Positions 3,761-22,836 of a stretch of DNA of 55,565 nucleotides are shown piece after piece. The stretch spans positions 1,067,537 through 1,123,101 of the forward strand of contig NW_018408567.1 in the NCBI RefSeq assembly GCF_002113885.1. Reading direction: 5' to 3'. Positions within the stretch are counted from its first letter, which is position 1, and each line of letters opens with the position of its first letter. A model generated the notes under the pieces. The model ran no database searches, was not told the origin of the DNA, and saw nothing but the letters and a program-made list of their open reading frames with translations. Both the position numbers and the translations under genes were made by a program. The DNA comes from Mizuhopecten yessoensis. Its lineage: Eukaryota.

Positions 3761-6541
3761 TTACAAATCACCGTCATGAATGTGTCCTGTGATTTTGCTT
3801 TGAAGAATAGAAAGTTCCTCAGTAAATGATTTGCTCTCTGACGCTAAAATCCCAAACAGTTTTTCTAGTTTGGTCAAATCTGGTCTTCTAGCATCCAGTA
3901 CAAACTGCAGTGGATTGAAACCTTTCTTCTTTAATTGAGTACACATGTACCCTTTTTCGTGTTGGTCCAGAAAGGAGACGAACACTAGCCGAGCTGGGAA
4001 CACTTCGTTATGGTATTTCTCAAAGAGATCGGCAAAATTTCCAACATTTTCCCCTTCGTCTGTCACAATAATGAAGGTCTTTACAACCCTCTTTTGTTTG
4101 TAGAAAGGCATCAAGGCCGACGATGGATTTGTGGAGCCGCTTGCCTCAGTTTTCATTGCAAGTTTCAGGGCTTCGTCGACATTTTCTGGCACCTTTTTTG
4201 GGCGCTTACAATTATGGTTGAATACAACAAGGTCGGCAGAACAAATCGAGCATAATATTCCAGTAATGACAGAACTAGTCCTGACCGCGATATCCATGGA
4301 CCCTGAACGATCTCCGAGTACAACGACAGGAGAATCTAGCTTCAGTTTGACGTTCTGAAGTTTAGATTCGGCAAGGCTGAGCAACGTTTTCATGAATGGA
4401 ATCTTATATTTTCCTGTCGCCCTCCTGCCACAGCGAAATCCGCGTGCTAGTTCTTTCAATGTGATTAACCTGTCCATCATCTTTCCGATTGGAAGGTCGC
4501 TTGTGTCTCCTGTGTCAAGTCGTTGCATTATTATTTCATCCACCTGGCGGCATTCTATGTCTTCATAATACCATAACACAGTGTCGAGTCGAGGTTCTGA
4601 TGTGGCAATTTTAATCTTTGACTCTACATTAAGGTACTTTTTAAATTTCCGGCTATGGGCATATGGAATGTCACACGTTTTTAATTTGTCGTTTATGTTC
4701 TTTTCGTTCAGGTCCTCGCAAGTGTGCACTACGGTTCCACAGGGTGCTGACTGGCCAAAACAGTAGGACAGAAACCAGGGTAGATTGGGAAAGTCCTCTA
4801 CAGGATTAAAATGGCAAATGTCGGCTAGTTTCTTCCATGGTTTTTTAGGAAGATGGAGGGCATAGCGTTCGAGCTCTTCCTTGCTCAATGTTTTTGTCCA
4901 TTTACGAACATTTTTACATATCGATCCACTTGCAGATCCCTTTTTAGGCTGTAGCTTTCTCATGCTATTTATTTTGCACTTCAATTTGTCAATTTTATGA
5001 CGAGACACCTTTCCCCTTGCCGTTTGAAGTCGTTTTAGGGTTTTTTCTCCTTGTCGGATAAGTCTTCCTGAATCCACGATTTGTAAAGCTTTCAATATTT
5101 CAACCATTCCATATCTGTCGCGATCGCATATGAACTCTGTGGACATCTTGAAATCGTTTCTTGCCCAGCTGGCAGCTAAAGCGCGTACTCGGACTTGTTG
5201 ACGTAGCTCCACCCCCTTTAGATGTAATAACGACATGCATGCAATATACCTGCTACGATTTTGATTTTGAGCTTGGATATGTTCATCCGTTGAAGCGTTG
5301 GCAAAGAAAAATTCGCTGACATTTTGATCAATATCAACCACGGTTGCATTCATTTTACTTCTGTGAGGCGATCTACTTTTACTATGACTTCTTCTGTGAG
5401 GCGTTACGCTTCTACTACGACTTCTTTTCCCGGGCCGTCTACGCCTAGTACGCCCCCTTCCCCGAAACCGTCTACGTTTAATTTTGCTCCTTCTGCGAGG
5501 CGATCTACTTCTACTGCGACTAAAGCGAGGCGACCTACTTCTACTGCGACTAAATCGAGGCGATCTACTTTTCCTATGACTCCAGCGACGCGAAATACTT
5601 CGACTACGCCTTCTTCTGCGACGCGATCTACTTCTGCTACGCCTCCAGCGAGGCGAAATACTTCGACTACGCCTTCTTCTGCGACGCGATCTACTTCTGC
5701 TACGACTCCAGCGAGGCGATCTACTTCTGCTCCGATTCTTTCTTTGAGTACTTGTTATGTAACTCAAGCCTTCAGGCGATCGACTCCTACTACAACTCCT
5801 ACTTACACTGCGACTCGATAAAACTCCTGGTGAGTCAGAGTAATTAGAATATGGCGATACCGATCGGCTTAATATCGATGAGTAAGTTGGAGATAGCTGT
5901 CGTGGAGAGAATGTATTTCTACGAGAACTCCTTGATCTGCGCGAGTATTTCATCATTTGAAACCGATTTGGGGAGAGACTACCATACCGTGGACCGATTG
6001 TTTTCGACGAGTTATTTCTACATGACGCGTCTCTTCTGTGTGGTTCATATAGATCCTGACTGACACATAGCAACGGACAACTTCTACTCCTTGAAATTTT
6101 TCTTGGACTTCGCCATCTTGATCTAGGTGATCGACGTCGCCAGGCTGTTATGTATTGCCATGGAGAACACGATCTGGAATAGGATCTTCTACGCCATCTT
6201 GGAGAGTATGACCTAGAGCGTGATCGTCGAATCTGGGTGTTCCGTCTTGGAGAACATGATGGTCGAATCGGGGTTCTCCGTCTTGGAGAACATGATGGTC
6301 GTGTCGGAGTTCTACTTCGTCTTGGAGAACATGCTGGTTGAGTCGGGGTTCTACTTCGTCTTGGAGAACATGATGGTCGAGTCGGGGTTCTCCGTTTTGG
6401 AGAACATGCTGGTCGAGTCGGAGTTCTACTCTGTCTTGGAGAACATGATCGTCGAGTCGGGGTTCTACTCCGTCTTAGTGAATAGGAACTAGGAACACAT
6501 TGGTGAGCTCGTCCCCTATTCCTCTTGCGTCTCCTTCCCAT
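3761..6541 (-). CDS. Gene A: RS/protamine-like N-terminus fused to a Ro60/TROVE-like helical region and a C-terminal vWA (MIDAS) domain, 926 aa, intronless CDS
   Basis: Residues 1-396 are R/S/P repeats (RSRTPTRPSCSP; SRSRSRRRRRRSRSISPRW). From M397 (5353) the sequence looks globular: PWKKLADICHFNP resembles the TROVE W-x-x-x-(D/L)-x-x-x-x-x-H-x-x-P segment. The vWA MIDAS is VVVLGDRSGSM (DRSGS at 4298-4312), followed by SGSTN and FIIVTDE, in the same order as in the Ro60 vWA domain. Confidence 0.85.
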   Translation of the reverse strand: MGRRRKRNRGRAHQCVPSSYSLRRSRTPTRRSCSPRQSRTPTRPACSPKRRTPTRPSCSPRRSRTPTQPACSPRRSRTPTRPSCSPRRRTPIRPSCSPRRNTQIRRSRSRSYSPRWRRRSYSRSCSPWQYITAWRRRSPRSRWRSPRKISRSRSCPLLCVSQDLYEPHRRDASCRNNSSKTIGPRYGSLSPNRFQMMKYSRRSRSSRRNTFSPRQLSPTYSSILSRSVSPYSNYSDSPGVLSSRSVSRSCSRSRSPEGLSYITSTQRKNRSRSRSPRWSRSRSRSRRRRRRSRSISPRWRRSRSRSRRRRRRSRSISRRWSHRKSRSPRFSRSRSRSPRFSRSRSRSPRRRSKIKRRRFRGRGRTRRRRPGKRSRSRSVTPHRRSHSKSRSPHRSKMNATVVDIDQNVSEFFFANASTDEHIQAQNQNRSRYIACMSLLHLKGVELRQQVRVRALAASWARNDFKMSTEFICDRDRYGMVEILKALQIVDSGRLIRQGEKTLKRLQTARGKVSRHKIDKLKCKINSMRKLQPKKGSASGSICKNVRKWTKTLSKEELERYALHLPKKPWKKLADICHFNPVEDFPNLPWFLSYCFGQSAPCGTVVHTCEDLNEKNINDKLKTCDIPYAHSRKFKKYLNVESKIKIATSEPRLDTVLWYYEDIECRQVDEIIMQRLDTGDTSDLPIGKMMDRLITLKELARGFRCGRRATGKYKIPFMKTLLSLAESKLQNVKLKLDSPVVVLGDRSGSMDIAVRTSSVITGILCSICSADLVVFNHNCKRPKKVPENVDEALKLAMKTEASGSTNPSSALMPFYKQKRVVKTFIIVTDEGENVGNFADLFEKYHNEVFPARLVFVSFLDQHEKGYMCTQLKKKGFNPLQFVLDARRPDLTKLEKLFGILASESKSFTEELSILQSKITGHIHDGDL
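6235..6475. repeat. 30/33-bp coding repeat in gene A (RSRTPTRPSCSP)
   Basis: The motif cgtcttggagaacatg recurs about 8 times. Confidence 0.85.
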
Positions 6542-8323
6542 GCCAACACCTCAATAATGATTCAATCAAATACAAATGTTTTTGTTTATATTAGCTGTTG
6601 TAATGACCCAGCTGATAATTCATTACGGAATGTACAGCGATCTTCAATTTCTTGTTGATATGCACGGCACTTGTTGCTGTTCATTGTACCTGAAATTGTT
6701 CATTAAAATCTGATGTAATAATACAGGTCTTCATTAAATATGATGTACGACTTGTAAGATCCCACATATGAAATGACAACAGTCTATATTAGGTTGTTTG
6801 CAGTGGATTTCTTTTCATTGTCATCGTATCAATTGTCGATATGGCGATCACTTATTGCCAATTCTAAAGTTCAAAAACAATTTCAGATGTTGATAGACAC
6901 TTCAAAACATCTAGCATCTGCTTAATATACTACCATAATCCATAATATGCAGATATTATAACCATATCCTCAGTGATTGATTGGCTGGAATTCATCAAAT
7001 ACTGTATGTACAAGCACTTATTAACACATTTTTTTCATACATCCAAAACGATATGATTGTAAAGGGGAAATGTCAATATCCCACACGCTCACTTACAGTA
7101 GAATGAAAAACACACATGTGTATTGAATAGAAAATCATTCAACCGATTTAATGGTCCGCACCATAGTCGGTTTGTTACGCAATCGTTACAGCTTCCCACT
7201 GTCACTGATATATATAAGCGTCGTTAACTCGAATATGTGGCTATGTAACAGCGTGGCAATATCAATCGTTAAATTAAAGTACCGATCGTAGATATATACT
7301 AGCACTCGTGTAGAACGTTCTGTATACGTATACAAAGCGTAGTCTGGTCGTATATATGGTATGTGTGTGTACTCACACTAACCTGTGTATATACGCACAA
7401 AGAAGTAGTCCCGTGTTATAATTAACCGTTTTTTACTGTCATGAAAGATATACTTTAAATTGTTACCATGTATATCTATATATAGACAGTATTTTTTCCC
7501 CGTACAACAGATACACCACTAAACAAGATTTTTTCTGTGTTGTGCAATAGTAACAGACTAATTAAAACGTCCCATAGGAATATATAGGAAGAAACACACA
7601 TAAAGAATCTAAATATGGAAATTACAAACAACTATAATGGAAACAGCACAGTCAGTATACTAGTTAAAAATTATAAAGAATCATATTTGCTTTTATTCAA
7701 GTATAGCATACAAACATATTAAAAGTATTGTAGTTGTTTTTCTTGCTAGTGTTAACTACGTATGATAGCGTGTAACTAAAACTTGGATATCATGATAATC
7801 AACGGCAATTATGCATAAACATGTATGTATTTTTACTTTAAAAGTAGATTTTATCAGGACTTGGTGGGGTTTTTTTTAAATTTTTAATCGGGTAAAACAT
7901 ATACAGAGCATTAAGTAACGAGTAAGTACATAAGTCGGGATCCAAGTTTTGGAACTGTTTTATTTTTTATTATTATTTTCATGCTTATAGAATACGTATC
8001 ACAGATATTTGCTGACATAATAGAAAATATTAGCACATAACACTTATGTAAGATTTGGAAATATCCTAGTTACCACAATAAGGAGTTTTGATATTTTATG
8101 TATAGTGTGATGTATAGCATTATTATATACAGTGGACTCGCAAATTGTTTGTTTAAATAAAAACATGTTATATTTATTCTTTAATAACACCTAGGATACT
8201 GTTAAAAAGAAGGTTACGGTTGAACGGTTCATTTATTTTGGATTACCTTTTAACTAAGACTACAAGGAGTGGCTATGTATTACCAACAAGATGGTATGCA
8301 AAATACTCTTTATTATGCATGTA

Positions 8324-9155
8324 TTTATTAGTCTCGTACCGATGAAACCGGGGAGACAAAAGGTTTTGTCTCCGTCCGTCCGTCCATTACCTTTGGTTAA
8401 AGTTTGTGTTAAAGTTTTGAAATGGCTCACCGTTCACTTAATAATAGTGTTAGGATTCTGGTTGTATGTACAGAGGTTCTTTAGGGGTCTAGCATTAATG
8501 TGTTGTTTAGTGAAAGTGGATTGTTTTCTTTTTCTTTTTCCTTTTCACATGTTTTGGACTTACATGTGACTATCTTGGCCAAAATCTGTAGGTTAAAGTT
8601 TGTGTTAAAGTTTCGTAATGGCTCACCGTTCACTTAATAATAGTGTTAGGATTCTGGTTGTATGTACAGAGGTTCTTTAGGGGTCTAGCATTAATGTGTT
8701 GTTTAGTGAAAGTGGATTGTTTTCTTTTTCTTTTTCCTTTTCACATGTTTTGGACTTACATGTAAATATCTTGGCCAAAATCTGTAGGTTAAAGTTTCGG
8801 TTAAAGTTTCGTACTGGCTCACCGTTCACTTAATAACAGTGTTAGGATGCTGCTATTACGTACACAGTTTCTTTATTGGGGTTTAGCATTAATGTTGTTT
8901 AGTGATAGTGGAAAACTAATTTTATTGTTTTTGAATTTTTGACATGTTTTGGACTTAACTATCTTGGCCAAAATATGCAGGTTAAAGTTTGGGAAAGTAC
9001 GGGCATTAGATTGCATGGTCCGCTATGTATTTACTGTGTACTCTGGAAAATCGTTTGAAAATATTGTCGCTTGCAATATCTTGTTTGCTGTGTATCTGTT
9101 GGGGGCGTCGGTAGGGGACATGTATTGATTCATCCATACCCACAGAATGCTTGTT
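8324..9155 (+). mobile_element. Non-autonomous Helentron-associated element (HINE/Pearl-like) with internal ~196-bp tandem repeats
   Basis: T-rich start, 5' subTIR gtctcgtaccga with nearby inverted repeat, (gtcc)n microsatellite, units starting at 8395, 8591, 8787 and 8980, 3' subTIR tcggtaggggac, end cttgtt. Confidence 0.8.
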
Positions 9156-10506
9156 ATTAATGCTTGAAAGATTTATTTAAATCACGTGTTATTTTTGACT
9201 GAAAACTATCATTTAAATAGTCCCTTAAGCGCTGTTTAGTCATTTCCGATTTTCTAGGATTACAAACTAAACACTGAAACTACGAATTAAGGTATTCCAT
9301 GTATAATACACATTTTTTTTAAAGTAAATGCATTTTATATTTTTCACACACACGTGTGAAGTCTTTCCCAAATTGTTGCTACACTATATGACAGTTTCGT
9401 CCGTTAAGGACCCATCAGTAGAACTAAAGGTGAATAGTCCATAATTAATGTATTGCAAAGTATATATAGCAAACAGAGAATGGAAGGGGAACGTGCCTAT
9501 CAACCCCTTGCTAGTGTTACGATCGAATTACAACATTTTGCTACAGCTGATAATTTATATCAGAATTCGTTGTTTTAAGTATCTCTACACCAACTTACTT
9601 TAAATACAATGTTCTTTGCCATCACCTTTTTTTTCTTTTCAAACTTTTGTTTTACATGCTTGTTTGACATAATCATATGTTTACTTTAAGGAAATCGCCC
9701 TGATTCAGATTTACATATTGTTATCTGAATGTATTTTATGGTTTGGATGTTTTATGTTTTTAACTGGTCGTAGATATGATGAGCGAAGTTATCACGACTT
9801 CAGCATGTGGTGCAGGAAACTCCCCATTTAGGATTCTTAGCTAAGGTTGCCTGTCCCACTGCACTGGATTCTTATGTACAGTGACCCCACTTTAATTTCC
9901 CTTTGAATATAACTGTAGCACATCTCGGCCAGAAGACGTCCATTGAACAGGTTACTCAGTTGTTTGGAGCGATAGTATAACAATCTGCAGTAATCAGGGT
10001 TCGAACCCCGGACTAGCCCCGCTGAAATTTTACACTAAGAACACTGTCGTTGATTATATAATTTGCTCATTCCATCTTTATTTGTTTTACATAAAAGTGC
10101 CACGAGGTATGGCTTTCATTTTTAAATGATTAATTAAAGCTATGGTCTTGCTGGGGAAAAACCCGTTTTCACTGTGCACTTACGGGGATCTTTAAGCAGA
10201 TGTTTATATGATGTCATTTCAACGATTTTAAGTCTCATTGGTGGTATTCTTTCTGTGAACAGTTTGAGGTCTTTTTATACCGTCAAACGTTGTTATTTCG
10301 AATTTGTGTTATGCAAATCACAAAGTCCACAGCGTTATTGTTTAAAATAATCTAGATAAAAATATGAAAAAGGAAACACCTTCTTTTAGTATTACAAATG
10401 TACAAAATTATATTGTGTCGATACAGAAATATATTAATAATACATTTAAAAAACCCCATCAACATATAAATGAATATCGGCCATGCACCTTTGACGTGAT
10501 ATATCG

Positions 10507-10712
10507 CCTATACTGTCGGAGATGACCTACCCATAGTCATGGTGCCGTTCCTGTTTACTCCCATTACAATATAGTAGGTTAACACAGCTGATCCTATACT
10601 GTCGGAGATGACCTACCCATAGTCCTGGTGCCGTTCCTGTTTACCCCCATTACAATATAGTAGGTTAACACAGCTGATCCTATACTATCGGAGATGACCT
10701 ACCCATAGTCCT
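10507..10712. repeat. 86-bp tandem repeat, about 2.4 copies
   Basis: cctatactgtcggagatgacctacccatagtc-type starts at 10507, 10593 and 10679. Confidence 0.9.
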
Positions 10713-11054
10713 GTTGTCTTAAGCTTATATACATAAACACGTGAAAAATATGCCGAAAAAATTAGAAAAGTGATACTGTTAACTGAAATTTTTGACGGTA
10801 TTACCTTTTTGCGCTTTTTTGCGATTTGATTGTGATACTAAGTTATGACTGCGCTATTTGAAATTTCTGTATATATTTGTATTTTGCATATATATTGAGT
10901 ACCAAAAACAAATAATTTAGGTAAATCGACAACACACGAATAAATTCTCAAAGAATTGAAGTTTTGTGCTGTCTTTACTATATATGTCGATTAATTCATC
11001 ACGTAAATGTTTCAATACTTTACATAAATGTCTTGTAAGAATATAAGTTCATTC

Positions 11055-11265
11055 TGCTGTAGTGGTTAGGGCGTCTGACATTATGCTACCACTAGCCCTC
11101 CTCACTGGGTCGCGTGTTCGAGACCTACGTGGGGCAGTCGCCAGGTACTGGCCGTAGGTCGGTGGTTTTCCTCCGGGAACTCCGGCTTTCCTCCACCAAT
11201 AAAACCTGGCATGTCCTTAAATGACCATGGCTGTTAATAGGATGTAAAACACAATCAAACCAATC
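11055..11265 (+). mobile_element. tRNA-derived SINE with V-domain (BivaV-type), slightly 5'-truncated
   Basis: tRNA-like head with B box gttcgagacc, V-domain ggttttcctccgggaactccggctttcctccacc, tail ccttaaatgaccatggctgttaataggatgtaaaac plus (aaacc)-like end; homologous to 25680-25902. Confidence 0.85.
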
Positions 11266-12250
11266 TACTGTAAAAAGCAACCAACCGTGTTTAAAAAAGA
11301 CAAAAACACCAGATTTTTTTATATAACGAAGTTTTATTTGCAAATCAACAAATTTTAACATCTGTTAAAATCTCTTATCATTTATTGTTTGAAAATGTGT
11401 ATGTGCTTTTTTTATATTCCAACTCGTTGTTACATACATTTATGGAGTTGTTATCTTATTTGTATATAACCACATATATGACATTGTTAATATAACTGAG
11501 TATGATTGATGATAGATAATTTACATTATGTTAAGCAGTGTAAACTCAATATAAGGAATTATGAATATCATTAAATATATATAATACACTACTACTATAG
11601 CACCGTTTGCATTGAGTGTAGATAATCAATAATAGATAACTTGGTCAGTGAAAAATAGTTCTGTATATAAATATACACACAAACATACATACATGAATTG
11701 AAATGTTAACTGTCTTTAATTAATAATAAATATTTTAGTTCATGAATGACACTAATAACTTAACTGTTAAGTTAATTGTTCATAATGAGTTAAACATACT
11801 TTTCTAAATATTTAATATACATGTTAACTTAACTGTATATTATTAAATATACATACTTTGCTGAATGTATAGCACATTTTACTTAACAGTAGGTAATAAA
11901 TAAAAAAAACAAAATGCTAAATGTATGACACTGAAATTTAACTGTTAACCCAATTGTTCATAATCAGTGAGAACTAATTTCCTGTATAAATGGAAGTGAT
12001 TATTGTATGTAAGTAACAATATACAATTGACAATATATATAATACTGTTAACTATACATAATTAAAGTTTTTTATATATATATATGGCACTGTTAATTGT
12101 ATATACATTTGTAATTGATAATAAATAATTAACTTTATGTATGACACTGTTAACATATTTGAACACCATCAATATTTTTTTCAATGATTAATGATTTATT
12201 AGATGTGTGATACGGATAACTGTACATAATTCATGATAAATTACTTAATA

Positions 12251-12500: not shown

Positions 12501-12659
12501 TTACGACATCGTTAAGTTTACTATATAATTACTGATGAAAGTACAAACCGGTTATATATAAAGAACGTGATATCAACAGGACTTTCAGTTGACATTAGTG
12601 AGTTCCGTGGTTTAATCTTCCACGATGTGAAAATACAAAATATGTTATAAAAAACATCG

Positions 12660-13281
12660 TCATGATCTTCAGTGAATGATTTCGCCTCTGACAAATCAAA
12701 ATCTTGAGCATTTTTTCTGGTTCGTTCAAATCGGGCCTTCTTTCATCAGGTACAAACTGCAGTAAGTGGATGTTAAACTTTCTCCTTTAATGCAGTCCAC
12801 GTGTAAACTTTTCGGTGTTTGTTCCAAAGGGAAAGGAACACTAGCCGAGCTAGGTACACTTTGGTTTGGTATTTCCCGCAAAAATCTGCAAAAATGTCTT
12901 CGTCTGTCACTAAAACAATGATGTCCTCTGTTGTTTGTAGAAAGCCTTGAAAGTCATTTGACATTTGTTAGCTTAGCTTTTAATTTCCATTTTGTTAAAT
13001 AACAACAAAGTTCATGTTCACATTTTTAAATCATTGTCAAATATTATTTATGATGAGAACCTCTCCCCGTTGCTTTAGCTATTTTTCTCCTTAACAGACA
13101 CGTCTTCAAACTTTGTTACGCTTTCAACAGCTCTCTCTCTCTGTCTTTATAAATATTGAAACCTTTTTATTGCCAAGCAAGCAGTTAGCGCACGTACTCG
13201 GACTCGTAGATCCTCCCCTTTTGAATTAACACTGGATACTACGAAACATCTGCTACGATTTTGACTTGGGCTTTGACATGT
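12660..13281 (-). pseudogene. Decayed TROVE/vWA remnant of gene B
   Basis: Frameshifted fragments match gene A: TDEHVKAQ vs TDEHIQAQ; QNRSRC...RVRVRALTA vs QNRSRY...QVRVRALAA; VLVTDEDIFADFCGKYQTKVYLARLVFLS vs IIVTDEGENVGNFADLFEKYHNEVFPARLVFVS; SEAKSFTED vs SESKSFTEE. About 0.6 kb remains versus about 1.5 kb in gene A, and the MIDAS segment is missing. Confidence 0.85.
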
Positions 13282-14106
13282 TCATCCGTTTAAACGTTCG
13301 CAAAGAAAATGATCAATGTCAAACACGGTTGCATTCGAGTTTTCTCTGCCTTTTTCATGTTTGCAATATGTATTTGTATTGATCCTACTATGTGATGCGA
13401 TCCTTCTATAACGTTTCCTTCCGCGATGCGATCCACTTCTACTACGTTTACTTCTGCAATGCGATCCACTTCTACTGCGTTTACTTCTATGATGCGATCC
13501 ACTTCTACTACGTTTACTTCTGCAATGCGATCCACTTCTACTACGACTCCTTCTATGATGCGATCCACTTCTACTACGACTTCTTTTGCAATGTGACACA
13601 CTTCTATGACGTTTCTTTCCGTGATGCGATCCACTTCTATTACGACTCCTGTTCGGCGATCTACTTCTGCTATGTTTCTTTCTGTGATGCGATCCACTTC
13701 TTTTATGTCCTCTAGGATGTGATCTACTTCTACTACAACTCTTTCTTTGCGTGCTAGTACTAAAACCCATCGCTTGAAACCGATCTAGGGAGAGGCTACC
13801 ATAACGTAGAGTTAATCCTTCCAACGAATGATGTCTAACTGATGAGTCCCTCCCATGCAATACAGATAACTGGCTGTGACTGGATCGAAGCAACGGACAA
13901 CTTCTACTCCTTGAAATGTTCCTTGAACTTTGCCATCGTGATCTAGGCCTCGGAGAACACGATCTGGAACAGGATAGGGGAATTGGGGTCCTACTCCGGC
14001 CTCGAGAATGTGACCGAGAACGTGATCGTTGAGTCGGTGAACTACTCCGCCGTTTTGAGTGCTGATGAGCTCGCCGCCTATACTTCCTTCCGCGTTTCTT
14101 TCCCAT
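13282..14106 (-). CDS. Gene B: truncated paralog of gene A; 274-aa R/S/H-rich protamine-like ORF
   Basis: Collinear with gene A: MGKKRGRKYRRRAHQ vs MGRRRKRNRGRAHQ; ISRSRSCPLL in both; RYGSLSLDRFQAM vs RYGSLSPNRFQMM; NATVFDID vs NATVVDID. A short deletion after NATVFDID shifts the frame to a stop at 13282. Confidence 0.7.
   Translation of the reverse strand: MGKKRGRKYRRRAHQHSKRRSSSPTQRSRSRSHSRGRSRTPIPLSCSRSCSPRPRSRWQSSRNISRSRSCPLLRSSHSQLSVLHGRDSSVRHHSLEGLTLRYGSLSLDRFQAMGFSTSTQRKSCSRSRSHPRGHKRSGSHHRKKHSRSRSPNRSRNRSGSHHGKKRHRSVSHCKRSRSRSGSHHRRSRSRSGSHCRSKRSRSGSHHRSKRSRSGSHCRSKRSRSGSHRGRKRYRRIASHSRINTNTYCKHEKGRENSNATVFDIDHFLCERLNG
13400..13700. repeat. 30-bp coding repeat in gene B (RSRSGSHHRS-like)
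   Basis: The motif gatgcgatccacttctactacg recurs with 30/33-bp spacing. Confidence 0.85.
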
Positions 14107-15262
14107 GCTTACTACTCAAGTACGATTGTGTTAAATACAAATGTTTTGTTTATGGTTTAGGAAATATTCAAGCAACCTTTATAATCTTGATAACAGGCAC
14201 GGCAATTGATAATGTTCATGAAGATATGTTGTAATCATAGGAGTGTTCAACAAACGTTCATGCACGAAGCCACATCAGCTGAATTCACAACATATGCAAT
14301 TTCAGGTGTCTAAATATATTTATAACGTCCAGAATCTGGTCGGTATACTATCATAATTTGTAGTCAAAGATATTATGAGGATATCCTTCCTGAAAGTTTG
14401 ACCGGAATTCCGTAACACATCCACCAATCCTGATGTACATTCTATAATTAAAACATTTTGTCAAACATCAAAATAAATATGATTGCTTAGGGGAAAATTC
14501 AATACCCCATCCAGTATCCTGCAATAGCGTGAAAACCACACATGTGTGATAAACAGAAAATCATGTCCAGGATTTAACAGTCCACGATAGTTATAAGATT
14601 ACATTATAATGTTACTCCAACATCTCCGTGAAATAGTTGAAATATGTTGCTACGTCCATGAGTTTCTTTCCCGTACATTAACGTACACCGTAATTACAAT
14701 CGTTTAACTGACGTGCTAAGATTACCGACCGTATATATACTAACACTGAAGAAGAACGTATGATATACGTTTAGAAAACGTAGTCTGGTCGTATCTATAT
14801 CAAGTAACGACGTGTGCTGTACGTTTGCCAAACGATACATATATTGACCTATACATACTTAGTCCCATGCTATTATTAGCATATATTCACTCTTATCAAT
14901 GAAAGATGAACGTAATATACACACACAGGGGACTGCACATTTAAAATGTGTTAAAAGATACAGTTTACAAAAAATAAATTTCACTATATCATAAAGCTGT
15001 TTCGTCCTTCCAGAAGTCATAGAAAATCATGTGGGGCCAGAAGTTGAAAATCTAAATTTTGTGAACAACTATTGAAACAGATGGTCAGGTGCGTAAAATC
15101 CCTTACTTAATTAATTAATATAATTTTTTTATTTAATTTTCAATGTATATTAATATATAGACAATAATTTCTCAATACAATTGATGCATCGACCATGATA
15201 GAATATATTTCTTTTTAACAACTGATATTGGTACTTATTGGCGATGTAGTATCACATATCTT

Positions 15263-15500
15263 ATAATGTGACCGGGTGGGGTGTCCTGCATGGTGTCTTC
15301 GGCGGTATGTTTCAGTGAGGTAGCACTATAAAGTCGGCATCAGTTCCGCGTTATCACAAGGAGACAAACACGAACATATCGCAGCCTCCCAAAACACACA
15401 CGCATACACTACACGCATGCATCTTGCACACAGGGGAGGTCGTCCTTAAATGACCATAGCTGTTGATAGGACGTTAAACAATACTAAACCAAACCAAACC
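15263..15500 (+). mobile_element. 5'-truncated SINE with Meta-domain-like core
   Basis: Core aatgtgaccgggtggggtgtc...ttcagtgaggtagcactataaa and the same 3' tail as the V-SINEs (ccttaaatgaccatagctgttgataggacgttaaac...aaaccaaacc). Confidence 0.7.
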
Positions 15501-15905
15501 AGATATTTGTTCATATATTTGCATATAACATTTAATAAGAGGTTTGTTTAAAGTTTTTTTTTCCCACGGAATATATTTACTAATATTGTACAATGATTTG
15601 CTGTTTTCACTTTAATGAAAAAATATGTTTTAGGTTTATCTATTAAAACATGTTATGATTTAAAAAAAAATAATGTATTCAAAAGAGTAATGTAAAATTC
15701 TAAAGAAATGAAGAATCAGCTTTAACGGTTCTATTTGGTCGAAATATTTGTGTAACCTTTACAGTTTAAGTGAAATATTAGTTAATGAGCTATTCTGCTG
15801 CATCCAAAAATTGTTAATTTGTAACTATTAGACAGTGATTTAAGTGCACCACTTTCCCCTTTTGCTACTTACAAATTATTTTTCGGAACCATTCAGTTGT
15901 GGTTT

Positions 15906-15996
15906 TTAACCCTTTCACTACTGTAGACCATAATGGACTCATCCAGATCAATGCATGGTAGAGTCGACTAAAGCTGGATAAGGGTGAAAGGTTTAA
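15906..15996. mobile_element. ~90-bp TTAA-flanked MITE; partial inverted copy at 30421-30485
   Basis: ttaaccctttcac...gtgaaaggtttaa; its reverse complement matches ccatgcatcgatatggacgagtccattatggtctacagtggtgaaacggttaa. Confidence 0.7.
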
Positions 15997-16744
15997 ATTT
16001 TTTTTTTTTATCCTTGGTACACCCACGAATTGTAAACCTACGAAATAGTCATACGGTGCAGTAAACCTCTTTCTTTAGTTTGGGTTTTTGCATCGAGTTT
16101 CTGAAGTTTTAAATAGGTATTCCCTGACTTAGTTTTTCTATTATTCACTTCTGAAACAATTCAACAGAGATGTTTGTGTATTGCCAATAAACACTGTTTA
16201 GAATGCATAAAGTTAATATTCAAACTTAAAAGCTTCACTTCTAAATCAGTTATTTTGTAGTGATAAAAGTTCTTTTAAAATGTCCTTCAATTATTATTTA
16301 GATCGTTTGAATTTTGTTCAACTGTTTTATTTCTTTTTAGATCTATCGTTTACATGTTGAAGTATTGCATATTTTTGTTACCTTCTAGGGCTAATAATAA
16401 ATACAGATACAAAATAAGAAGCTCATATATAAAACCTTCGCTTTTTCAAAGCAAGAAAAGAAAATCTTTACTGTAACGTTAAGCGATTTAGTTCGTAAAA
16501 AGTATGAAATACCAACACGTTTGACAACAAATGCAAAGTTATTTAAATGCATTATGGGACATATAAGCCTCATTTTAACTTCTTATACCAATACTCTTTA
16601 CATCTGCATAGTTCAATTACATGAGCACAATCACAAAAAGACTAAGGTGGGCTACTCTTTAAGATCGCTTTGGGAAACCAAAATTGAGAAGATGGAAAGA
16701 CTGACAAATCAGAAAGACTTGGCAAACGACTTTTAAAAATGGTA

Positions 16745-17370
16745 GTAATAGTATTTTTACAATTGTGTATGGTAACCAGTGCCAGATCTGGTACTATGGT
16801 TAAAGACATACATTTCCTACACAACGTTACTTTGATGCGCCACATACGGTGCTTATCAGTGGAAAGAAATTGTACTGACGTCGGCCCAACGTGACATTGA
16901 TACACCACATTCGGTGCTTGTTAGTGGAAATAAGATCTACTGACGTCGGCCCAGCGTGACATTGATACACTACATACGGTGCTTGACATTAGACAATTGC
17001 AATACCGACGTTGGTAGTACATGTAATAGCATTTTGACAATTATTTATGGTAACCAGTGCCAGATCTGGTACTATTTTTAAAGACATATATTTCCTACAC
17101 AAAAATGTTACCCATTTCACCCCCCNTACGGTGCTTGTCAGTGGAAATAAGATGTACTGACGTCGACCCAACTTGACATTGATACACCACATGCGGTGAT
17201 TGTCAGTGGAAATAAGATGTACTGACGCCGGCCCAACGTGACATTGATACACCACATACGGTGCTTGTCAGTGGAAATAAGATGTACTGACGTCGGCACA
17301 ACGTGACATTGATACACCACATACGGTGCTTGACATTGGACAAATAAAGTACCGACGTTGGTCCAACGTT
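16745..17370. repeat. 65-bp minisatellite inside a duplicated block
   Basis: cggtgcttgtcagtggaaataagatgtactgacgtcggcccaacgtgacattgatacaccacat-type units at 16847, 16912, 16977 and 17129, 17194, 17259, 17324; the leader ggtaaccagtgccagatctggtactat occurs twice. Confidence 0.9.
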
Positions 17371-18401
17371 CATTTCCATACATACGTAGAACTAGTCGTA
17401 TGTTTCTGTTGTCGTTATCGGGCCATAATTTGATCAATGTCTTTTTGCTCGTTTGAGGCCGCTGCCAGAATAATGTAACTTGCTAAATTGTCATGCTACC
17501 GTAATTGGTATTAACATTCTGGTGTTTCAGTGAAATACACTTAAAGATGGCCTTTAAGTGGTTTCATCACCTGTGGAAGCCTTTGTGGCAATTTTGAGGA
17601 CGGCAAACTCTCAACCAAAAAAATAATAAACCCGTGTCTTTTTTATTTCATCTAAAATATGCCTACGGGAATATTCTTTCAGTTTAATATCTAGCTATAC
17701 ACTACGACTACTTGTAAGTTTAGTAAATCATATTTACAAAGATGAAGAAAGGGAAAAACTGACTTTAATGCGAATACTTTCGAACCCAAAACCGAAAAGA
17801 AAAAAAAAATCCTCCGAAAAAAGTCCATCATTTTGTTAATGATTGAAGTGCAGTTTTGTTACATTATAGTTATGAATGTTTATCAAGATATAATTGAACC
17901 TTGATCCAGTGACTGTTTCTTCTTTTACTGACGATTGAGCAACTTAATTGTATTTTGGAAAAATTTCAACCTTGTGAAGATAACGAGTTCCGAGGAGACA
18001 CATAAACAAAACACAATCGAATGCACAGTAGTTTACTATATTTACCTTGTGATCATCGTTTTATTGTTTAGTTAATTGTGTACTTACAAGAGTATTTTGC
18101 TTTGCGAAAACCGTGGACAGTACAAAACAATTTCTTCCGATGTTTCGATTTTACACAACTTTATTGAATGGGTCATATTTTCGAAATGATTTATGGAAAC
18201 CTCAGTTCACAAAAGTGACCTTTTCTGTCATTTAAAAAAATAATATACATCTTTTTATTTAGTTTTATTCTGATGAGTTTCTTTTCATTTAAATTTGAAA
18301 ATGATTCCCCGTTTCGTTTACCAATAACCAAGTATCAAGTTAATTGATGTATAATACATTGTAGGAACATAATTAGTAGTATAAAACTCGGACTTTTTAC
18401 T

Positions 18402-18561
18402 TAAGGAATGATTTTTATTTTTTCAACATTTATGAGGTCATAACAACAATGGGTTTATGGACATATTGAATGAATCGCGTTAGCGATTCATGTAAAATAT
18501 GTCCAAAAACCCATTGTTGTTATGACCTCATAAATGTTGAAAAAATAAATATCATTCCTTA
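18402..18561. mobile_element. Near-perfect fold-back MITE
   Basis: Arms aaggaatga...caacatttatgaggtcataacaacaatgggtt and aacccattgttgttatgacctcataaatgttg...tcattcctt, with an inner hairpin tgaatcgc/gcgattca. Confidence 0.8.
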
Positions 18562-20397
18562 TATTTACATTGACGAATCCTTTCAGTGGATCGATATAAC
18601 AACGAATAAAACAAATAAACAGGGTTTGTTCCTGCTTATACACGGGTGCAACGCAGTGGCGAGAACAGTGTTTTTTCGCGGGGAAATGTGACACTATCGT
18701 GAGAGATCTTAGCAACCGTCAACAACAATAACACAACAAAATGTAGTTCCATATTCAATGTTTATTTGTAGCACAGGACACGTGAATACGTGGATATTTC
18801 ACAAAGCACAGTTCAATAATATTTTAAGATGTAAGAATTAAGCATCTAGGTCGGTCGTTCCGAGTGAGTAGTTTTTGTAGTGTATTACTACGCAGTGTGA
18901 TCAGGTTACTATCAGTTCCCACGTGCTGAGATTCTATGAACGCCTGTGTTATGCATTTATGAATGTAATTTTTGTCAATGGGTCTAAGCATATAGAATGT
19001 AAATATTTATAAAACAAACAACATCGGAAAACGTTTTTACATAAAAAAAAACCCAACGTGTTTCGTGTATCGCCAATCAAACTTAGTATGCACATTGTTC
19101 TATATCATCACACCTTTGATTACATAAGAACATTTTCCCTTTCTATTCTAATCTTTTGCAACATGTCATCGTTGGAAATTTACGTTCGATATCGATAAAC
19201 GCTAGTACAATCGAACGTGAGTTTCCGACGATGGCCAGGCAACATGCAGGTTTGATGGATCGTTCTCTTTAAAGATTAACATTTGGTTTATTTTGATGTC
19301 TCATGAATATGATATTATCACCGTCATTTGATGCATGGGTATCTGTCATCAATGTTCCGTGTTGTTTGTGTTGTATCAATATTTACATCTTTTGTTTAAG
19401 TATCTTATATTCATGTCTTCTCTTCTTCCTTCGTCCGAATTCAGTATTTTTTAACAATATGAAAAGGGTTGAAAGTTTTATAATAAAATATCCCATTCTT
19501 ATATTGCAAATACTTTATGGCAACCACACGTGATACAGAAAACTGCCCCATTGTGAAGCATATCATCTCCGATATCAGATGTTTACGATATTCTTTCCAT
19601 TGTTCTATGGTTTTTTGTTGTTGTTATTACTTTAGTAAACAGTACATTCTTTTTCTACTTCTTTTTGTTTGATTGTTTTTGGGTTTTTTTCTTCTTCTTT
19701 AGTTGTTTGTTTTTGTTCTTTAATGTTTTTTAGTTCGAAACGCTCTTTTCTATCGTGATATATTTGTTTTGTGACGATAGTAAACTAAAAATTTGCGAAG
19801 ATATTTAAATAATTTTATGCATGTTTACGTTTTATTGAGCTTTTTTCGAATTCAAATCCTCGCAATAAAGGGATTTTTTTGTAAAAATTGCTCAAAATTG
19901 AATGATTAACAGTAATATGAATCTACTGTTTATCTGGAAATAATTTTGAGGTTCAACTCTATCTATTTCAAGATTAAGTTGGCAGACGAATAACTATCAT
20001 AAGTTGGCCTGTTGTTCAAAGGAAACTAAGTATATGGTTCAATGCGAAATCAGTGATGTACGGTTCTACAATCAGTATTGATACTTGAAAAACATTAATT
20101 CTCACTAGAACAGAATATTTACATTTTCATTGATTTATTACAACAATACAGAGGTTCAACAGCCAAACAATTAATTCACATTGCTTTGTTATGTATACAT
20201 GCAATTAGCGATTATAGTATGAATAGTTTGATTATAAGTTCACGACCTAGCTTTTAACAGCTATTAAGTATAATATGTATATAACTAAAAGCAAACAAAA
20301 TAAAGATAAAAATACGACGACGACGACATTTTAAATCATCACGAATTTTACCATGTTATTGATCACATATTTAGTTCAAGCAGACATGGTTGGTATG

Positions 20398-22836
20398 TCA
20401 CTGACTGATAACGTCTGCGATGTGGTAACGGCAACCGTTTCGGTTCCAAGTAACATCAACTTCCACCACATCGCCACCTGACGTACGCTTACGTCTCTCC
20501 GTCCTTTTACTTATACATCGACATCGTTCAGGTGAGCTACTGCAACTACTTGAAAGAGACGACATACTACTTCTCCAAGGTGATGTGCTGCAAGTTCGAC
20601 AGTTCGACCTACTCCTTCTTCGACACCGTCGCCAAGGAGATAAACTGCAACTCCTTCGAGTGTATGAACTACCCCTACTTCGACGCCGTCGCCAAGGTGA
20701 TATGCTGCAGCTTCTTCGAATATGCGACGTACTCCTACTTCGGCGCCGTCGCCAAGGTGATGTGCTGTAACTCCTTCGATCATTCGACCAGCTCCTATTT
20801 TGATCTCGTCGCCAAGGTGACAAACTGCAACTCCTTCGAATATACGACCTACTCCTACTTCGGCATTGTCGCCAGCGTGATGTTCTGAAGCTCATTCTAT
20901 CATTCGATCCACTCCTACTTCGAGAACGTCGACAAGGTGATTTACTATAACTCCGTCGACGAGGAGATCTGCTTATGCTACGATCCCTGTACCAAGAATA
21001 ATATCTACTCCTTCGCTGGAGTGGAAACCTTGAAATCCCCCACCGGGGATATATATTTCTGTAGCAACCTCTATTGCGGAAGCGTGTTAGCCGTGACCTG
21101 TTTGTACCGCTACATCTTCGCCCAGGTGATCTAGTCCTGCTGCGTCTACTGCTAGTACTGCGACTCCTTAGCAAATGACGTTTTCTACTTGTACTCCGAC
21201 GCCATCGCTGTGGCGGTTTACTAAGACTGCGACTCCTTCGCCGTGGTGATTTACTATTACTGCGACTCCTTCGCCCTGGTGCGTTACTAATACTGCGACT
21301 CCTTCGCCCTGGTGAGTTACTAGGACTGCGACTCCTTCGCCCTGGTGAGTTACTAATACTGCGGCTCCTTCGCCGTGGTGAGTTACTATTCCTGCGACTC
21401 CTTCGCCCTGGTGAGTCACTAATACTGCGACTCCTTCGCCCTGGTGAGTTACTAGGACTGCGACTCCTTCGCCCTGGTGAGTTACTAGTGCTGCGACTCC
21501 TTCGCCCTGGTGAGTTCCTATTACTGCGACTCCTTCGCCCTGGTGAGTTACTAATACTGCGGCTCCTTCGCCGTGGTGAGTTACTATTCCTGCGACTCCT
21601 TCGCCCTGGTGAGTTACTAAGGCTGCGACTCCTTCGCCCTGGTGAGTTCCTATTACTGCGACTCCTTCGCCCTGGTGAGTTACTATGACTGCGACTCCTT
21701 CGCCCTGGTGAGTTACTAATACTGCGGCTCCTTCGCCGTGGTGAGTTACTATTCCTGCGACTCCTTCGCCCTGGTGAGTTACTAATACTGCGGCTCCTTC
21801 GCCGTGGTGAGTTACTATTACTGCGACTCCTTCGCCTTGGTGATTTACTATTACTGCGACTCCTTCGCCGTGGAGAGTTACTAAGACTGCGACTCCTTCG
21901 CCCTGGCGAGTTACTAAGACTGCGACTCCTTCGCCCTGCTGAGTTACTAAGACTGCGACTCCTTCGCCGTGGGGATTTACTATTACTGCGACTCCTTCGC
22001 CGTGGCGAGTTACTAAGACTGCGACTCCTTCGCCCTGCTGAGTTACTAAGACTGCGACTCCTTCGCCGTGGCGAGTTACTAAGACTGCGACTCCTTCGCC
22101 GTGGGGAGTTACTAAGACTGCGACTCCTTCGCCGTGGGGAGTTACTATTACTGCGACTCCTTCGCCGTGGTGATTTACTAAGACTGCGACTCCTTCGCCC
22201 TGGTGATTTACTAATACTGCGACTCCTTCGCCCTGGTGAGTTACTAGTGCTGCGACTCCTTCGCCGTGGTGATTTACTAGTGCTGCGACTCCTTCGCCAT
22301 GGTGAGTTACTATTACTGCGACTCCTTCGCCCTGGTGCGTTACTAATACTGCGACTCCTTCGCCCTGGTGAGTTACTAATACTGCGACTCCTTCGCCCTG
22401 GTGAGTTACTAATACTGCGGCTCCTTCGCCGTGGTGAGTTACTATTCCTGCGACTCCTTCGCCCTGGTGAGTCACTAATACTGCGACTCCTTCGCCCTGG
22501 TGAGTTACTATGACTGCGACTCCTTCGCCGTGGTGAGTTACTATTCCTGCGACTCCTTCGCCCTGGTGAGTTACTAAGACTGCGACTCCTTCGCCCTGGT
22601 GAGTTACTAGTGCTGCGACTCCTTTGCCGTGGGGTTATATTAGTACTGCGATGGCATCGCTGTGGCGGTTTACTCAGACTGCGACTCCTTCGCCGCGGTG
22701 AATTACTAGAACTGCGACTCCTTCGCCGTGGTGATTTACTAGAACTGCGACTCCTTCGCCCTGGCGATTCACCAGCACAGAGACTCCTCCGCCTTGGTGA
22801 TTTACTGGCACTGTGATACCTTTCCACAGACATCAT
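20398..22836 (-). CDS. Gene C: 812-aa protamine-like/RS-repeat protein with no globular domain
   Basis: ATG-to-TGA ORF made of about 54 decapeptide repeats (RRSRS[ILN]SNSP[GR]) followed by Cys/Trp/Tyr-containing 20-aa repeats (e.g. RSRSYIRRSCSLSPWRR). The frame stays open across the repeats and their unique flanks. Confidence 0.75.
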   Translation of the reverse strand: MMSVERYHSASKSPRRRSLCAGESPGRRSRSSSKSPRRRSRSSSNSPRRRSRSLSKPPQRCHRSTNITPRQRSRSTSNSPGRRSRSLSNSPGRRSRRNSNSPRRRSRSHSNSPGRRSRSISDSPGRRSRRNSNSPRRRSRSISNSPGRRSRSISNSPGRRSRSISNAPGRRSRSNSNSPWRRSRSTSKSPRRRSRSTSNSPGRRSRSISKSPGRRSRSLSKSPRRRSRSNSNSPRRRSRSLSNSPRRRSRSLSNSPRRRSRSLSNSAGRRSRSLSNSPRRRSRSNSKSPRRRSRSLSNSAGRRSRSLSNSPGRRSRSLSNSPRRRSRSNSKSPRRRSRSNSNSPRRRSRSISNSPGRRSRRNSNSPRRRSRSISNSPGRRSRSHSNSPGRRSRSNRNSPGRRSRSLSNSPGRRSRRNSNSPRRRSRSISNSPGRRSRSNRNSPGRRSRSTSNSPGRRSRSPSNSPGRRSRSISDSPGRRSRRNSNSPRRRSRSISNSPGRRSRSPSNSPGRRSRSISNAPGRRSRSNSKSPRRRSRSLSKPPQRWRRSTSRKRHLLRSRSTSSRRSRTRSPGRRCSGTNRSRLTRFRNRGCYRNIYPRWGISRFPLQRRSRYYSWYRDRSISRSPRRRSYSKSPCRRSRSRSGSNDRMSFRTSRWRQCRSRSRSYIRRSCSLSPWRRDQNRSWSNDRRSYSTSPWRRRRSRSTSHIRRSCSISPWRRRRSRGSSYTRRSCSLSPWRRCRRRSRSNCRTCSTSPWRSSMSSLSSSCSSSPERCRCISKRTERRKRTSGGDVVEVDVTWNRNGCRYHIADVISQ
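20565..20960. repeat. 60-bp coding tandem repeat in the 3' part of gene C
   Basis: The motif gtcgccaaggtga and its variants recur every 60 bp (near 20628, 20688, 20748, 20808, 20868, 20928). Confidence 0.9.
21190..22810. repeat. 30-bp coding tandem repeat inside gene C
   Basis: Unit ctgcgactccttcgccctggtgagttactaata-type with a strict 30-bp period and substitutions only, no visible indels. Confidence 0.95.

What the first reader, a model, noticed from the sequence alone, without database searches (positions are those of the whole stretch)
3761..22836. Cluster of three intronless RS/protamine-like genes graded from RS-TROVE/vWA fusion to pure RS polymer
Seen: three same-strand, single-exon, Arg/Ser-rich ORFs within 19 kb. 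A has an intact Ro60-like vWA module, B has the same module decayed, and C has none. A and B are directly homologous; the link of C to them is only compositional (SPWRR, RSCS motifs). Established: bivalve sperm nuclear basic proteins (PL-I, PL-II, PL-III) are RS-rich and derived from histone H1; no H1 winged-helix core is visible in any ORF here. Inference: this may be an uncharacterised locus of nucleic-acid-condensing or RNP-granule proteins, possibly germline, arising independently of H1.
Basis: partly seen in the sequence, partly recalled or inferred. Interest (0 to 1): 0.85.

Follow-up and report, generated by a model that had tools for sequence, protein, structure and literature searches.

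The report
Scallop Ro60-like gene with RS tails
A scallop gene joins a long arginine/serine tail to a distant relative of the RNA-checking protein Ro60. Beside it lie a half-decayed copy and a tail-only reading frame, so this looks like an RNA-protein-particle locus and not a sperm DNA-packing one.

Summary
Three minus-strand Arg/Ser-rich ORFs exist: A 3761-6541, B 13282-14106 and C 20398-22836.

- **A** is a real, conserved gene. Its C-terminal 530 aa belong to a large unnamed eukaryotic family: a helical ring-like domain plus a vWA domain with a full MIDAS motif. By fold, profile comparison and language-model features this family is a remote Ro60/TROVE relative, but it fails the Pfam TROVE model. 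Canonical members carry a short N-terminal RGG box and have at least 7-8 coding exons. A has one coding exon and a 396-aa RS domain where the RGG box sits. It looks like an old retrocopy, shared with Argopecten and Ylistrum, with its module under purifying selection (dN/dS about 0.11).
- **B** is a tandem duplicate of A. Its module is deleted or broken, but its RS ORF has stayed open, which is unlikely under neutrality.
- **C** has no module. It is orthologous at DNA level to an ORF at the same syntenic place in Ylistrum, where NCBI's model splices it onto the A-like exon.

Nothing supports the protamine or germline reading.

The parts
3761..6541 (-). Gene A: single uninterrupted CDS of 926 aa (RS domain plus Ro60-like module). 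The same genome's public annotation holds the 926-aa form and a 730-aa form that starts at an internal Met.
5354..6541 (-). A's RS domain, aa 1-396. It has 39-bp repeats (6221-6476), 30/33/63-bp repeats (5490-5735), a non-repeat island conserved in B and Argopecten (about 5945-6088) and an RGRG relic at 5450-5470.
4352..5353 (-). A's helical, TROVE-like domain (aa 397 to about 730). It includes the motif PWKKLADICHFNP (4802-4840), whose invariant Trp and His align with Ro60 W177 and H187.
3764..4351 (-). A's vWA domain (aa about 731-926) with a complete MIDAS: DRSGS at 4298-4312, the Thr in SGSTNP at 4124-4141 and the Asp in TDEGEN at 4046-4063.
6878..7357 (-). Upstream flank of A that is homologous to the upstream flank of B. 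The duplicated unit therefore includes the presumed promoter or 5' UTR.
13282..14106 (-). ORF B: 274-aa RS-only ORF, paralogous to A's RS domain and to the first residues of the module.
12665..13275 (-). Broken remnants of B's module: the start at 13156-13275 and the vWA end at 12665-12944, with stops and frameshifts. About 1.1 kb between them is deleted.
14297..14798 (-). Upstream flank of B, homologous to A's upstream flank.
20398..22836 (-). ORF C: 812-aa RS polymer made of an 11-aa unit SPGRRSRSxSN x 48 (21218-22806) and then 20-aa units RRSCSxSPWRRRRSRSxS (20605-20959). It is orthologous to an ORF upstream of the A-like gene in Ylistrum.

Best explanation
Gene A encodes a scallop-specific paralogue of a widespread, unnamed eukaryotic protein family. 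The family's body is a remote relative of the RNA-quality-control protein Ro60: a helical TROVE-like domain closed by a vWA domain with a complete metal-binding MIDAS site. Canonical members are about 590 aa, are encoded by at least 7-8 coding exons, and start with a short RGG box, which is an RNA-binding and condensate-forming tail.

A arose from the bivalve 'clade-1' canonical gene. Because all ancestral introns are missing, the most likely route is retroposition. It evolved fast at first and has since been under purifying selection. In scallops the RGG tail was replaced by a 396-aa RS domain grown by tandem-repeat expansion.

Inferred mechanism: the module binds RNA or an RNP partner as Ro60 does. 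The RS tail, like RS domains of SR-related proteins, is phosphorylation-regulated and directs the protein to nuclear speckles or RNP condensates.

B is a later tandem duplicate, including the upstream flank. It lost the module but keeps the RS ORF open, so it probably still makes an RS-only protein. C is an older RS-only coding unit, conserved in Ylistrum. It is either a separate gene or an alternative 5' exon of the A-type gene.

Shown: homology, fold, exon structure, selection, synteny. Inferred: RNA binding, RS-tail function, and expression of B and C.
For: - **Family size and spread.** 718 cluster representatives at E<=1e-3 and 254 at E<=1e-30. Members occur in molluscs, echinoderms, hemichordates, amphioxus, annelid, nemerteans, Hydractinia, Balamuthia (U-box fusion) and protists (RING fusions).
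- **RGG N-termini** in canonical members.
- **Invariant MIDAS** D-x-S-x-S...T...D.
- **Fold.** The AF2 model has pLDDT 93. The 13 best Foldseek PDB hits are all Ro60/TROVE at E 3e-9 to 3e-5, against at best 2e-4 for vWA-only hits. VIA-align gives Z 16 with about 396 residues aligned across both domains.
- **Profile comparison.** hhalign against the scallop's own bona fide Ro60 homologues gives probability 91%, E 1e-6 over 302 columns, aligning the family's W/H motif to Ro60 W177/H187. H187S abolishes Y RNA binding (PMC11277228).
- **Language-model features.** The nearest ESM Atlas clusters carry TROVE and vWA_Ro60.
- **Exon structure.** The two canonical paralogues in this genome (C3225, C20) and Ylistrum P0003 are split into at least 7-8 exons with shared boundaries. 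A is one ORF.
- **Tree.** The A lineage nests in bivalve clade 1 on a long stem.
- **Selection.** Module dN 0.16, dS 1.3-1.5 against Argopecten.
- **B.** Collinear with A. P(ORF stays open) is 0.0004-0.02 in a neutral simulation.
- **C.** 70-81% DNA identity to the syntenic Ylistrum ORF in both repeat modules. Gene order SAPCD2, zinc finger, C, A is shared. NCBI's Ylistrum model joins the C-like and A-like parts.
- **Possible expression of A.** 14 runs of transcriptome-like size, from 5 studies, hold 83-96% of A's words.
Against: - Pfam TROVE and vWA_Ro60 models do not hit A or its relatives. A PDB sequence profile search finds nothing. TM-scores to Ro60 are only 0.38-0.46 with large rmsd, and vWA alone already gives Z 14.
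The runs are only guessed to be RNA.
- No poly(A) or target-site-duplication relic was sought for the retrocopy claim.
- dS is near saturation.
- The RS-domain alignments (omega about 0.5-0.6) are unreliable in repeats.
- Within-array variation in C shows no clear third-position excess.
- Both Argopecten copies carry one frameshift each; these may be assembly errors.
Confidence: 0.7

Rival explanations
1. C and A (and possibly B) are not separate genes but exons of one long transcription unit. The C ORF would be an alternative 5' coding exon spliced into the start of the A exon, giving a Ro60-like protein with an RS tail of more than 1000 aa.
For: NCBI's Ylistrum balloti model P0236 (1086 aa) joins the C-like ORF (L028 10001 to about 11030) to the A-like exon (18098-20431). 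An acceptor-like pyrimidine tract plus AG sits at the homologous spot in A, about 6489. All units are on one strand and the order is conserved.
Against: A, B and the Argopecten and Ylistrum A-like ORFs each keep their own conserved start, MG(R/K)(R/K/T)R. The NCBI models for this genome and for Argopecten treat A as standalone. The Ylistrum donor (T|GTCATA) is weak. C and its Ylistrum counterpart both run on to their own stop codons. No C-like ORF lies within 10 kb upstream of the Argopecten copies.
Confidence: 0.2
2. One reading: the three ORFs are protamine-like, nucleic-acid-condensing proteins of the germline that arose independently of histone H1.
For: Extreme Arg/Ser content and pI 12. 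Retrocopies are often testis-expressed (general knowledge). There is no H1 domain.
Against: A's 530-aa module is under strong purifying selection. It belongs to a family whose other N-terminal tails are RGG, RING and U-box, which are RNP and ubiquitin contexts and not chromatin ones. No germline expression data exist here.
Confidence: 0.08
3. Only A is functional. B is a dead pseudogene and C is a minisatellite whose open frame is a by-product of a stop-free repeat unit.
For: B's module is destroyed. Neither exact ORF is in the protein collection. Variation among C's array units is not enriched at third positions. Another frame of the same array is also open for 435 aa.
Against: B's 274 codons stay open at a branch divergence where 4-8 stops are expected, while its module remnant has 3 stops in 85 codons. 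C's ORF extends 820 nt beyond the array. In Ylistrum it is conserved in the same frame, with the same two-module order and at 70-81% DNA identity.
Confidence: 0.2
4. The module does not bind RNA. Its conserved MIDAS face is a protein-ligand site, as in integrin I domains or the MDN1/Rea1 MIDAS, and the family acts as an adaptor in a protein-remodelling or ubiquitin pathway.
For: All five MIDAS residues are invariant or nearly so. MDN1-MIDAS and other protein-binding vWA domains are good structural matches. There are RING/U-box fusions in protists.
Against: Full-length matches are to Ro60 only. The helical-domain motif aligns to Ro60's Y-RNA-binding His187. RGG and RS tails are typical of RNA-associated proteins.
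Confidence: 0.12

Closest known systems
Ro60 / Rsr (TROVE domain plus vWA_Ro60; PDB 1YVP, 9NEN, 2NVO)
   Same: Same two-domain order and about the same length (530 aa): a helical repeat domain followed by a vWA domain with MIDAS. It is the best full-length structural match (Z 16, Foldseek E 3e-9). hhalign gives probability 91%. The W...H..P motif aligns to Ro60 W177/H187/P190.
   Different: Sequence identity is 12-14%. The Pfam TROVE and vWA_Ro60 models are not matched. The scallop has separate bona fide Ro60 homologues elsewhere. Canonical members add an N-terminal RGG box, and A adds a 396-aa RS domain. No Y-RNA partner is known.
SR-related proteins (SRRM1/SRRM2-type RS-domain proteins)
   Same: Long RS/SR-dipeptide tracts: 88 dipeptides in A's tail and 178 in C. 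NCBI's automatic names for the Argopecten and Ylistrum orthologues are 'SRRM1-like' and 'SRRM2-like'.
   Different: No PWI, cwf21 or RRM domain. The similarity to SRRM proteins is compositional only. The folded part is Ro60-like.
Bivalve sperm protamine-like proteins (PL-I/II/III, H1-derived)
   Same: Very basic, Arg/Ser-rich sequence in a bivalve.
   Different: No H1 winged-helix domain. Far larger. Attached to, or derived from, a conserved RNP-type module. No sperm expression shown.
Bivalve-expanded Pfam TROVE families (IPR008858; PMC8059625, PMC8382680)
   Same: TROVE-like proteins that are multiplied in bivalves, several of them encoded by single ORFs (C5581, C82352, C2699 in this genome).
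   Different: Those match Pfam TROVE and human Ro60 at E 1e-125. A's family does not, and it forms its own deep eukaryotic family.

Membership tests
Ro60/TROVE (Pfam PF05731 + PF25045) | Sequence matches the Pfam TROVE / vWA_Ro60 models above the curated cut-off | tested here: not met
   Pfam scans of A, of its module and of 10 relatives give no TROVE hit. The only hit is VWA_CoxE at E 0.0046, below cut-off. PF05731 searched over the whole genome hits other loci, not A.
Ro60/TROVE (Pfam PF05731 + PF25045) | Helical-repeat domain followed by a vWA domain, superposable on Ro60 over the full length | tested here: met
   AF2 model at pLDDT 93. Foldseek ranks 1-13 are all Ro60/TROVE, E 3e-9 to 3e-5. 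VIA-align Z 15.6-16.2 with 368-400 residues aligned, model 1-461 against chain 79-536. Caveats: TM is only 0.38-0.46, and ring closure was not inspected.
Ro60/TROVE (Pfam PF05731 + PF25045) | MIDAS motif DxSxS...T...D in the vWA domain | tested here: met
   D300, S302, S304 and D384 are invariant and T360 is nearly invariant in 58 sequences. In A these lie at 4298-4312, 4124-4141 and 4046-4063.
Ro60/TROVE (Pfam PF05731 + PF25045) | Remote sequence homology detectable by profile-profile comparison, including the RNA-contact region around H187 | tested here: met
   hhalign of A2 against A3: probability 91%, E 1.1e-6, 302 columns. A3 is bona fide Ro60, hitting human Ro60 at E 7e-102. The template profile has only 3 sequences.
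Ro60/TROVE (Pfam PF05731 + PF25045) | Binds Y RNA or misfolded non-coding RNA | not testable with these tools
   Needs CLIP or in-vitro binding.
SR / SR-related proteins | RS domain of at least 50 aa rich in RS/SR dipeptides | tested here: met
   A aa 1-396: R+S 56%, 88 RS/SR dipeptides. B: 55 dipeptides. C: 178 dipeptides.
SR / SR-related proteins | RRM (classical SR) or PWI/cwf21 (SRRM) domain | tested here: not met
   No Pfam domain of these kinds in A, B or C.
Protamine-like sperm nuclear basic proteins (H1-derived PL) | Linker-histone winged-helix core or descent from H1 | tested here: not met
   No linker-histone Pfam hit. A descends from the RGG-TROVE-like-vWA family.
Protamine-like sperm nuclear basic proteins (H1-derived PL) | Expression in spermatids and presence in sperm chromatin | not tested
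Tissue labels are coded.
Processed retrogene | Lacks all introns of a multi-exon parent gene present elsewhere in the genome | tested here: met
   A's module is one ORF. The C3225 and C20 paralogues match exon by exon (at least 6-7 pieces each, shared boundaries near query residues 89, 137, 287 and 390). Ylistrum P0003 has at least 7 mapped exons over 7.8 kb.
Processed retrogene | Poly(A) relic and target-site duplications | not tested
   Expected to be eroded at this age (dS about 1.4 to Argopecten). Not searched.

The most novel reading that the evidence does not exclude
The RGG-TROVE-like-vWA family would be a third, undescribed branch of Ro-type RNA-surveillance proteins. It is old in eukaryotes, absent among the animal hits seen here from vertebrates, insects and nematodes, and may have its own non-coding RNA partners. 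In scallops it would have spawned a small locus-level system: a Ro-like protein with an SR-type tail (A) plus free RS polypeptides (B, C) that co-assemble with it in a phosphorylation-controlled RNP condensate, possibly in the germline.
Probability: 0.2. Interest if true: 0.75.

Novelty: new variant of a known kind. Interest (0 to 1): 0.55.

Why it matters
Only two TROVE-type proteins, Ro60 and TEP1, are studied in animals. This work puts a name-less but very widespread relative on the map. It has a complete MIDAS site, a conserved counterpart of Ro60's RNA-binding His187, and interchangeable N-terminal tails (RGG, RS, RING, U-box). The scallop locus is a natural experiment in tail-swapping. 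A retrocopy exchanged an RGG box for an RS domain, and its duplicate shed the folded body while keeping the tail. That makes two questions testable: what the tail does for a Ro-like core, and whether RS-only polypeptides have a function of their own. It also removes an attractive but unsupported 'new protamine' label.

Tried and rejected
- **Single-sequence AF2 fold** of the module was useless, pLDDT 41.
- **PDB sequence searches** with the module and with the family profile found nothing meaningful.
- **Exact look-ups** of ORF B and ORF C in the protein collection: not on record.
- **BLASTP of C's tail** against the Ylistrum ORF with composition adjustment gave nothing. DNA-level BLAST did.
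- **Codon-position analysis of C's 47 repeat units** was uninformative.
- **tblastx of window 1-3700** against the Ylistrum region holding UPF0184 and DDX39 gave no hit. Those genes lie beyond the window.
- **Literature searches** for a description of this family (TROVE + RGG / paralog / invertebrate) found none. They found only reports that Pfam-TROVE families are expanded in bivalves.
- They were compared exon by exon only.
Full report
**Observation.**
- A: 3761-6541, 926 aa.
- B: 13282-14106, 274 aa.
- C: 20398-22836, 812 aa.

They stand out as GC-rich blocks in an AT-rich animal sequence. Earlier notes of this scan call the genome a scallop, and the best outside matches are scallop proteins. 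Composition is extreme: R+S is 56% in A's first 396 residues, 47% in B and 61% in C, all with pI 12. Tandem repeats with periods that are multiples of 3 build most of the RS sequence:
- 39-bp and 30/33/63-bp units in A.
- 33/66-bp units in B.
- A 33-bp x 48 array plus 60-bp units in C.

**What A's body is.**
Pfam sees nothing in the whole ORFs. In the isolated C-terminal part it sees only a sub-threshold VWA_CoxE match, E 0.0046.

An exhaustive HMMER search with residues 445-926 found 718 cluster representatives at E<=1e-3 and 254 at E<=1e-30. The named ones are 'uncharacterized proteins' of Argopecten, Ylistrum, oysters, Pinctada, abalones, Aplysia, Owenia, nemerteans, sea stars, brittle stars, acorn worms, amphioxus and Hydractinia. 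Others are a U-box fusion in Balamuthia, RING fusions in protist transcriptomes, and members on long metagenome contigs. One Biomphalaria entry is auto-named 'TROVE domain-containing'.

The conserved block really starts at A residue 397 (NATVVDID...). My first query began 48 residues late. The module is therefore about 530 aa, the size of Ro60.

A 58-sequence alignment shows an invariant D-x-S-x-S, a nearly invariant Thr and an invariant Asp. That is a complete MIDAS. The helical part has invariant W125 and H133 in module numbering.

**Relation to Ro60.**
- With the alignment, AlphaFold gives a confident model: pLDDT 93, pTM 0.84, about 285 helical residues and then a Rossmann-like vWA.
- Foldseek against the PDB puts Ro60/TROVE entries in ranks 1-13, at E 2.7e-9 to 3e-5 with about 510-530 columns. 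vWA-only proteins follow at E>=2e-4.
- VIA-align gives Z 15.6-16.2 with 368-400 aligned residues spanning both domains, against Z<=14.5 for vWA-only chains.
- TM-scores are modest (0.38-0.46), so the relative domain geometry or the ring differs.
- The scallop has bona fide Ro60 homologues elsewhere. These match human Ro60 at E 1e-125.
- A profile-profile comparison of the new family with them gives probability 91%, E 1e-6 over 302 columns. It aligns PW..KKLADICHFNP with NWEHKDAIRLAHVNP. By this corresponds to Ro60 W177...H187..P190.
- H187S is reported to abolish Y RNA binding (PMC11277228).
- Language-model features also place the module next to TROVE/vWA_Ro60 clusters.
- Sequence-only searches of the PDB and the Pfam TROVE model fail.

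I therefore file it as a remote Ro60-like family and not as a Ro60 member.

**Tails.**
Canonical members begin with an RGG box, for example MPRGRGRGRGRGG, of 20-40 residues. A, B and the Argopecten and Ylistrum A-type ORFs begin MG(R/K)(R/K/T)R and then run into hundreds of RS-rich residues. A keeps an RFRGRGR relic at 5450-5470. The closest RS-less relative, P0192 from an unidentified sequencing run, has a short degenerate tail and shares A-lineage-specific residues. The RS tail was therefore gained after the A lineage had formed.

**Origin of A.**
- This genome has two canonical paralogues, on contigs C3225 and C20. Each matches A only piecewise, in at least 6-7 exons with shared boundaries.
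- They are the orthologues of Ylistrum P0003 and Argopecten P0187 respectively. P0003 itself has at least 7 mapped exons over 7.8 kb.
- A's whole CDS is uninterrupted, as are its Argopecten and Ylistrum orthologues.
- A maximum-likelihood tree puts (P0192,(A, Argopecten RS copy)) inside bivalve clade 1 with Ylistrum P0003 and oyster genes (SH-aLRT 98), on a long stem of 0.91.
- Loss of all introns at once points to retroposition. No poly(A) relic was looked for.
- Against Argopecten the module has dN 0.15-0.16 and dS 1.3-1.5, so omega is about 0.11: a working gene.
- The RS tail aligns poorly, with omega about 0.6.
- I compared exons one by one and did not build joined spliced sequences.

**B.**
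A and B are collinear from the upstream flank (6878-7357 against 14297-14798) through the RS region to the 3' end, at about 66-84% DNA identity. B lacks roughly 1.1 kb of the module. What remains carries frameshifts and 3 stops.

The 274-codon RS ORF is nevertheless intact. In a simple neutral simulation at the observed divergence, 4-8 stops are expected and P(no stop) is 0.0004-0.02. The simulation is crude and ignores indels, which would make openness even less likely. Ylistrum shows no B-like copy between its C-like and A-like ORFs, so the duplication is probably lineage-specific.

**C.**
Within the window, C has no detectable DNA similarity to A, only a marginal repeat match to B, and no module remnant. 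It is single-copy in the genome.

A protein search with its non-array part found one hit, Ylistrum P0236, 'SRRM2-like'. That 1086-aa NCBI model consists of two parts:
- A C-like ORF: an 11-aa unit SKSPQPRRRST x ~11, then 20-aa units RRSCSISPWRRSRSRSTS.
- An A-like exon, which has its own upstream MGKTRRRR start, spliced on 7 kb further down.

The two repeat modules match C at 70-81% DNA identity, in the same order. The neighbourhood is shared: SAPCD2, an opposite-strand zinc-finger gene, C, A, then UPF0184 and a DEAD-box helicase.

C is therefore a conserved coding-type element tied to the A gene, not a chance minisatellite ORF. Whether it is a separate gene or a 5' exon cannot be decided here. 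The order of motifs in C (SP-R repeats, then SCSxSPWRR repeats) parallels A's first ~150 residues. That hints at descent from an A-type 5' end, but in low-complexity sequence this is weak. No C-like ORF lies within 10 kb upstream of either Argopecten copy.

**Expression.**
Fourteen runs of transcriptome-like size (68-300 M letters of contigs, 5 studies) hold 83-96% of A's sampled words. They are only guessed to be RNA. I did not send those places to any search tool afterwards. Transcription, strand, ends, tissue and splicing of A, B and C therefore remain untested.

**Verdict.**
- The Ro60-like reading of the module is supported by three kinds of evidence.
- The 'protamine-like, germline' reading has no support.
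- The best account is an RS-tailed, intronless paralogue of an undescribed but widespread RGG-TROVE-like-vWA family, with a tail-only duplicate (B) and a conserved tail-only upstream unit (C).
- No paper in the held library describes this family. Published bivalve 'TROVE expansions' concern the Pfam-positive family.

Noticed in passing
G000 contigs C5581:608438-609223, C82352:5976-6725, C2699:22825-23565 (L017, L019, L021): Three bona fide Ro60 homologues, each encoded by a single long ORF (466-483 aa) and only 38% identical to one another. L017 matches human Ro60 at E 1e-125. This fits the published bivalve expansion of Pfam-TROVE genes. A multi-exon TROVE gene also lies on C5569.
   Followed up: partly
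L023 and L024 (Argopecten irradians CM084267.1, 39.11 Mb and 39.22-39.25 Mb): Argopecten has two nearly identical A-type copies 118 kb apart in opposite orientation. Each has a different single frameshift (NCBI flags them 'LOW QUALITY PROTEIN'). One has an internal duplication of the conserved RS-domain island. They are either a very recent inverted duplication or an assembly artefact.
   Followed up: partly
L001/L002 (metagenome contigs up to 802 kb carrying P0049): A family member sits in a densely packed, apparently intron-free stretch with a mitochondrial-carrier gene, a WLM protease, an HD domain protein and glycosyltransferases. That context is typical of a giant virus or a very compact protist. 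The nearest ESM Atlas cluster is 45% viral (Nucleocytoviricota).
   Followed up: no
P0007 (1905 aa) and P0011 (1963 aa, Acytostelium subglobosum): These proteins match the module in four separate stretches each, so some amoebozoans seem to encode tandem multi-module versions of the family.
   Followed up: no
window 26565-28541 (+): A 658-aa single-ORF C2H2 zinc-finger protein lies between SAPCD2 and C on the opposite strand. Its C-terminal finger is conserved at the syntenic place in Ylistrum (L028 6597-6773).
   Followed up: partly
window 8395-8912, 10507-10713, 16745-17369: Non-coding tandem repeats in the spacers between A, B and C: 196 bp x 2.6, 86 bp x 2.4, and 65/282-bp units. The Ylistrum spacer between its C-like and A-like ORFs is likewise filled with long satellites (L028 11519-15670).
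   Followed up: no
window 35746-36192: A run of N (assembly gap or masked stretch) inside a short repetitive ORF.
   Followed up: no
window 6489 and L028 18128: An acceptor-like pyrimidine tract plus AG lies about 18 codons into the A-type ORF in both scallops, offset by one base. In Ylistrum it is the acceptor that NCBI's fused model uses.
   Followed up: partly
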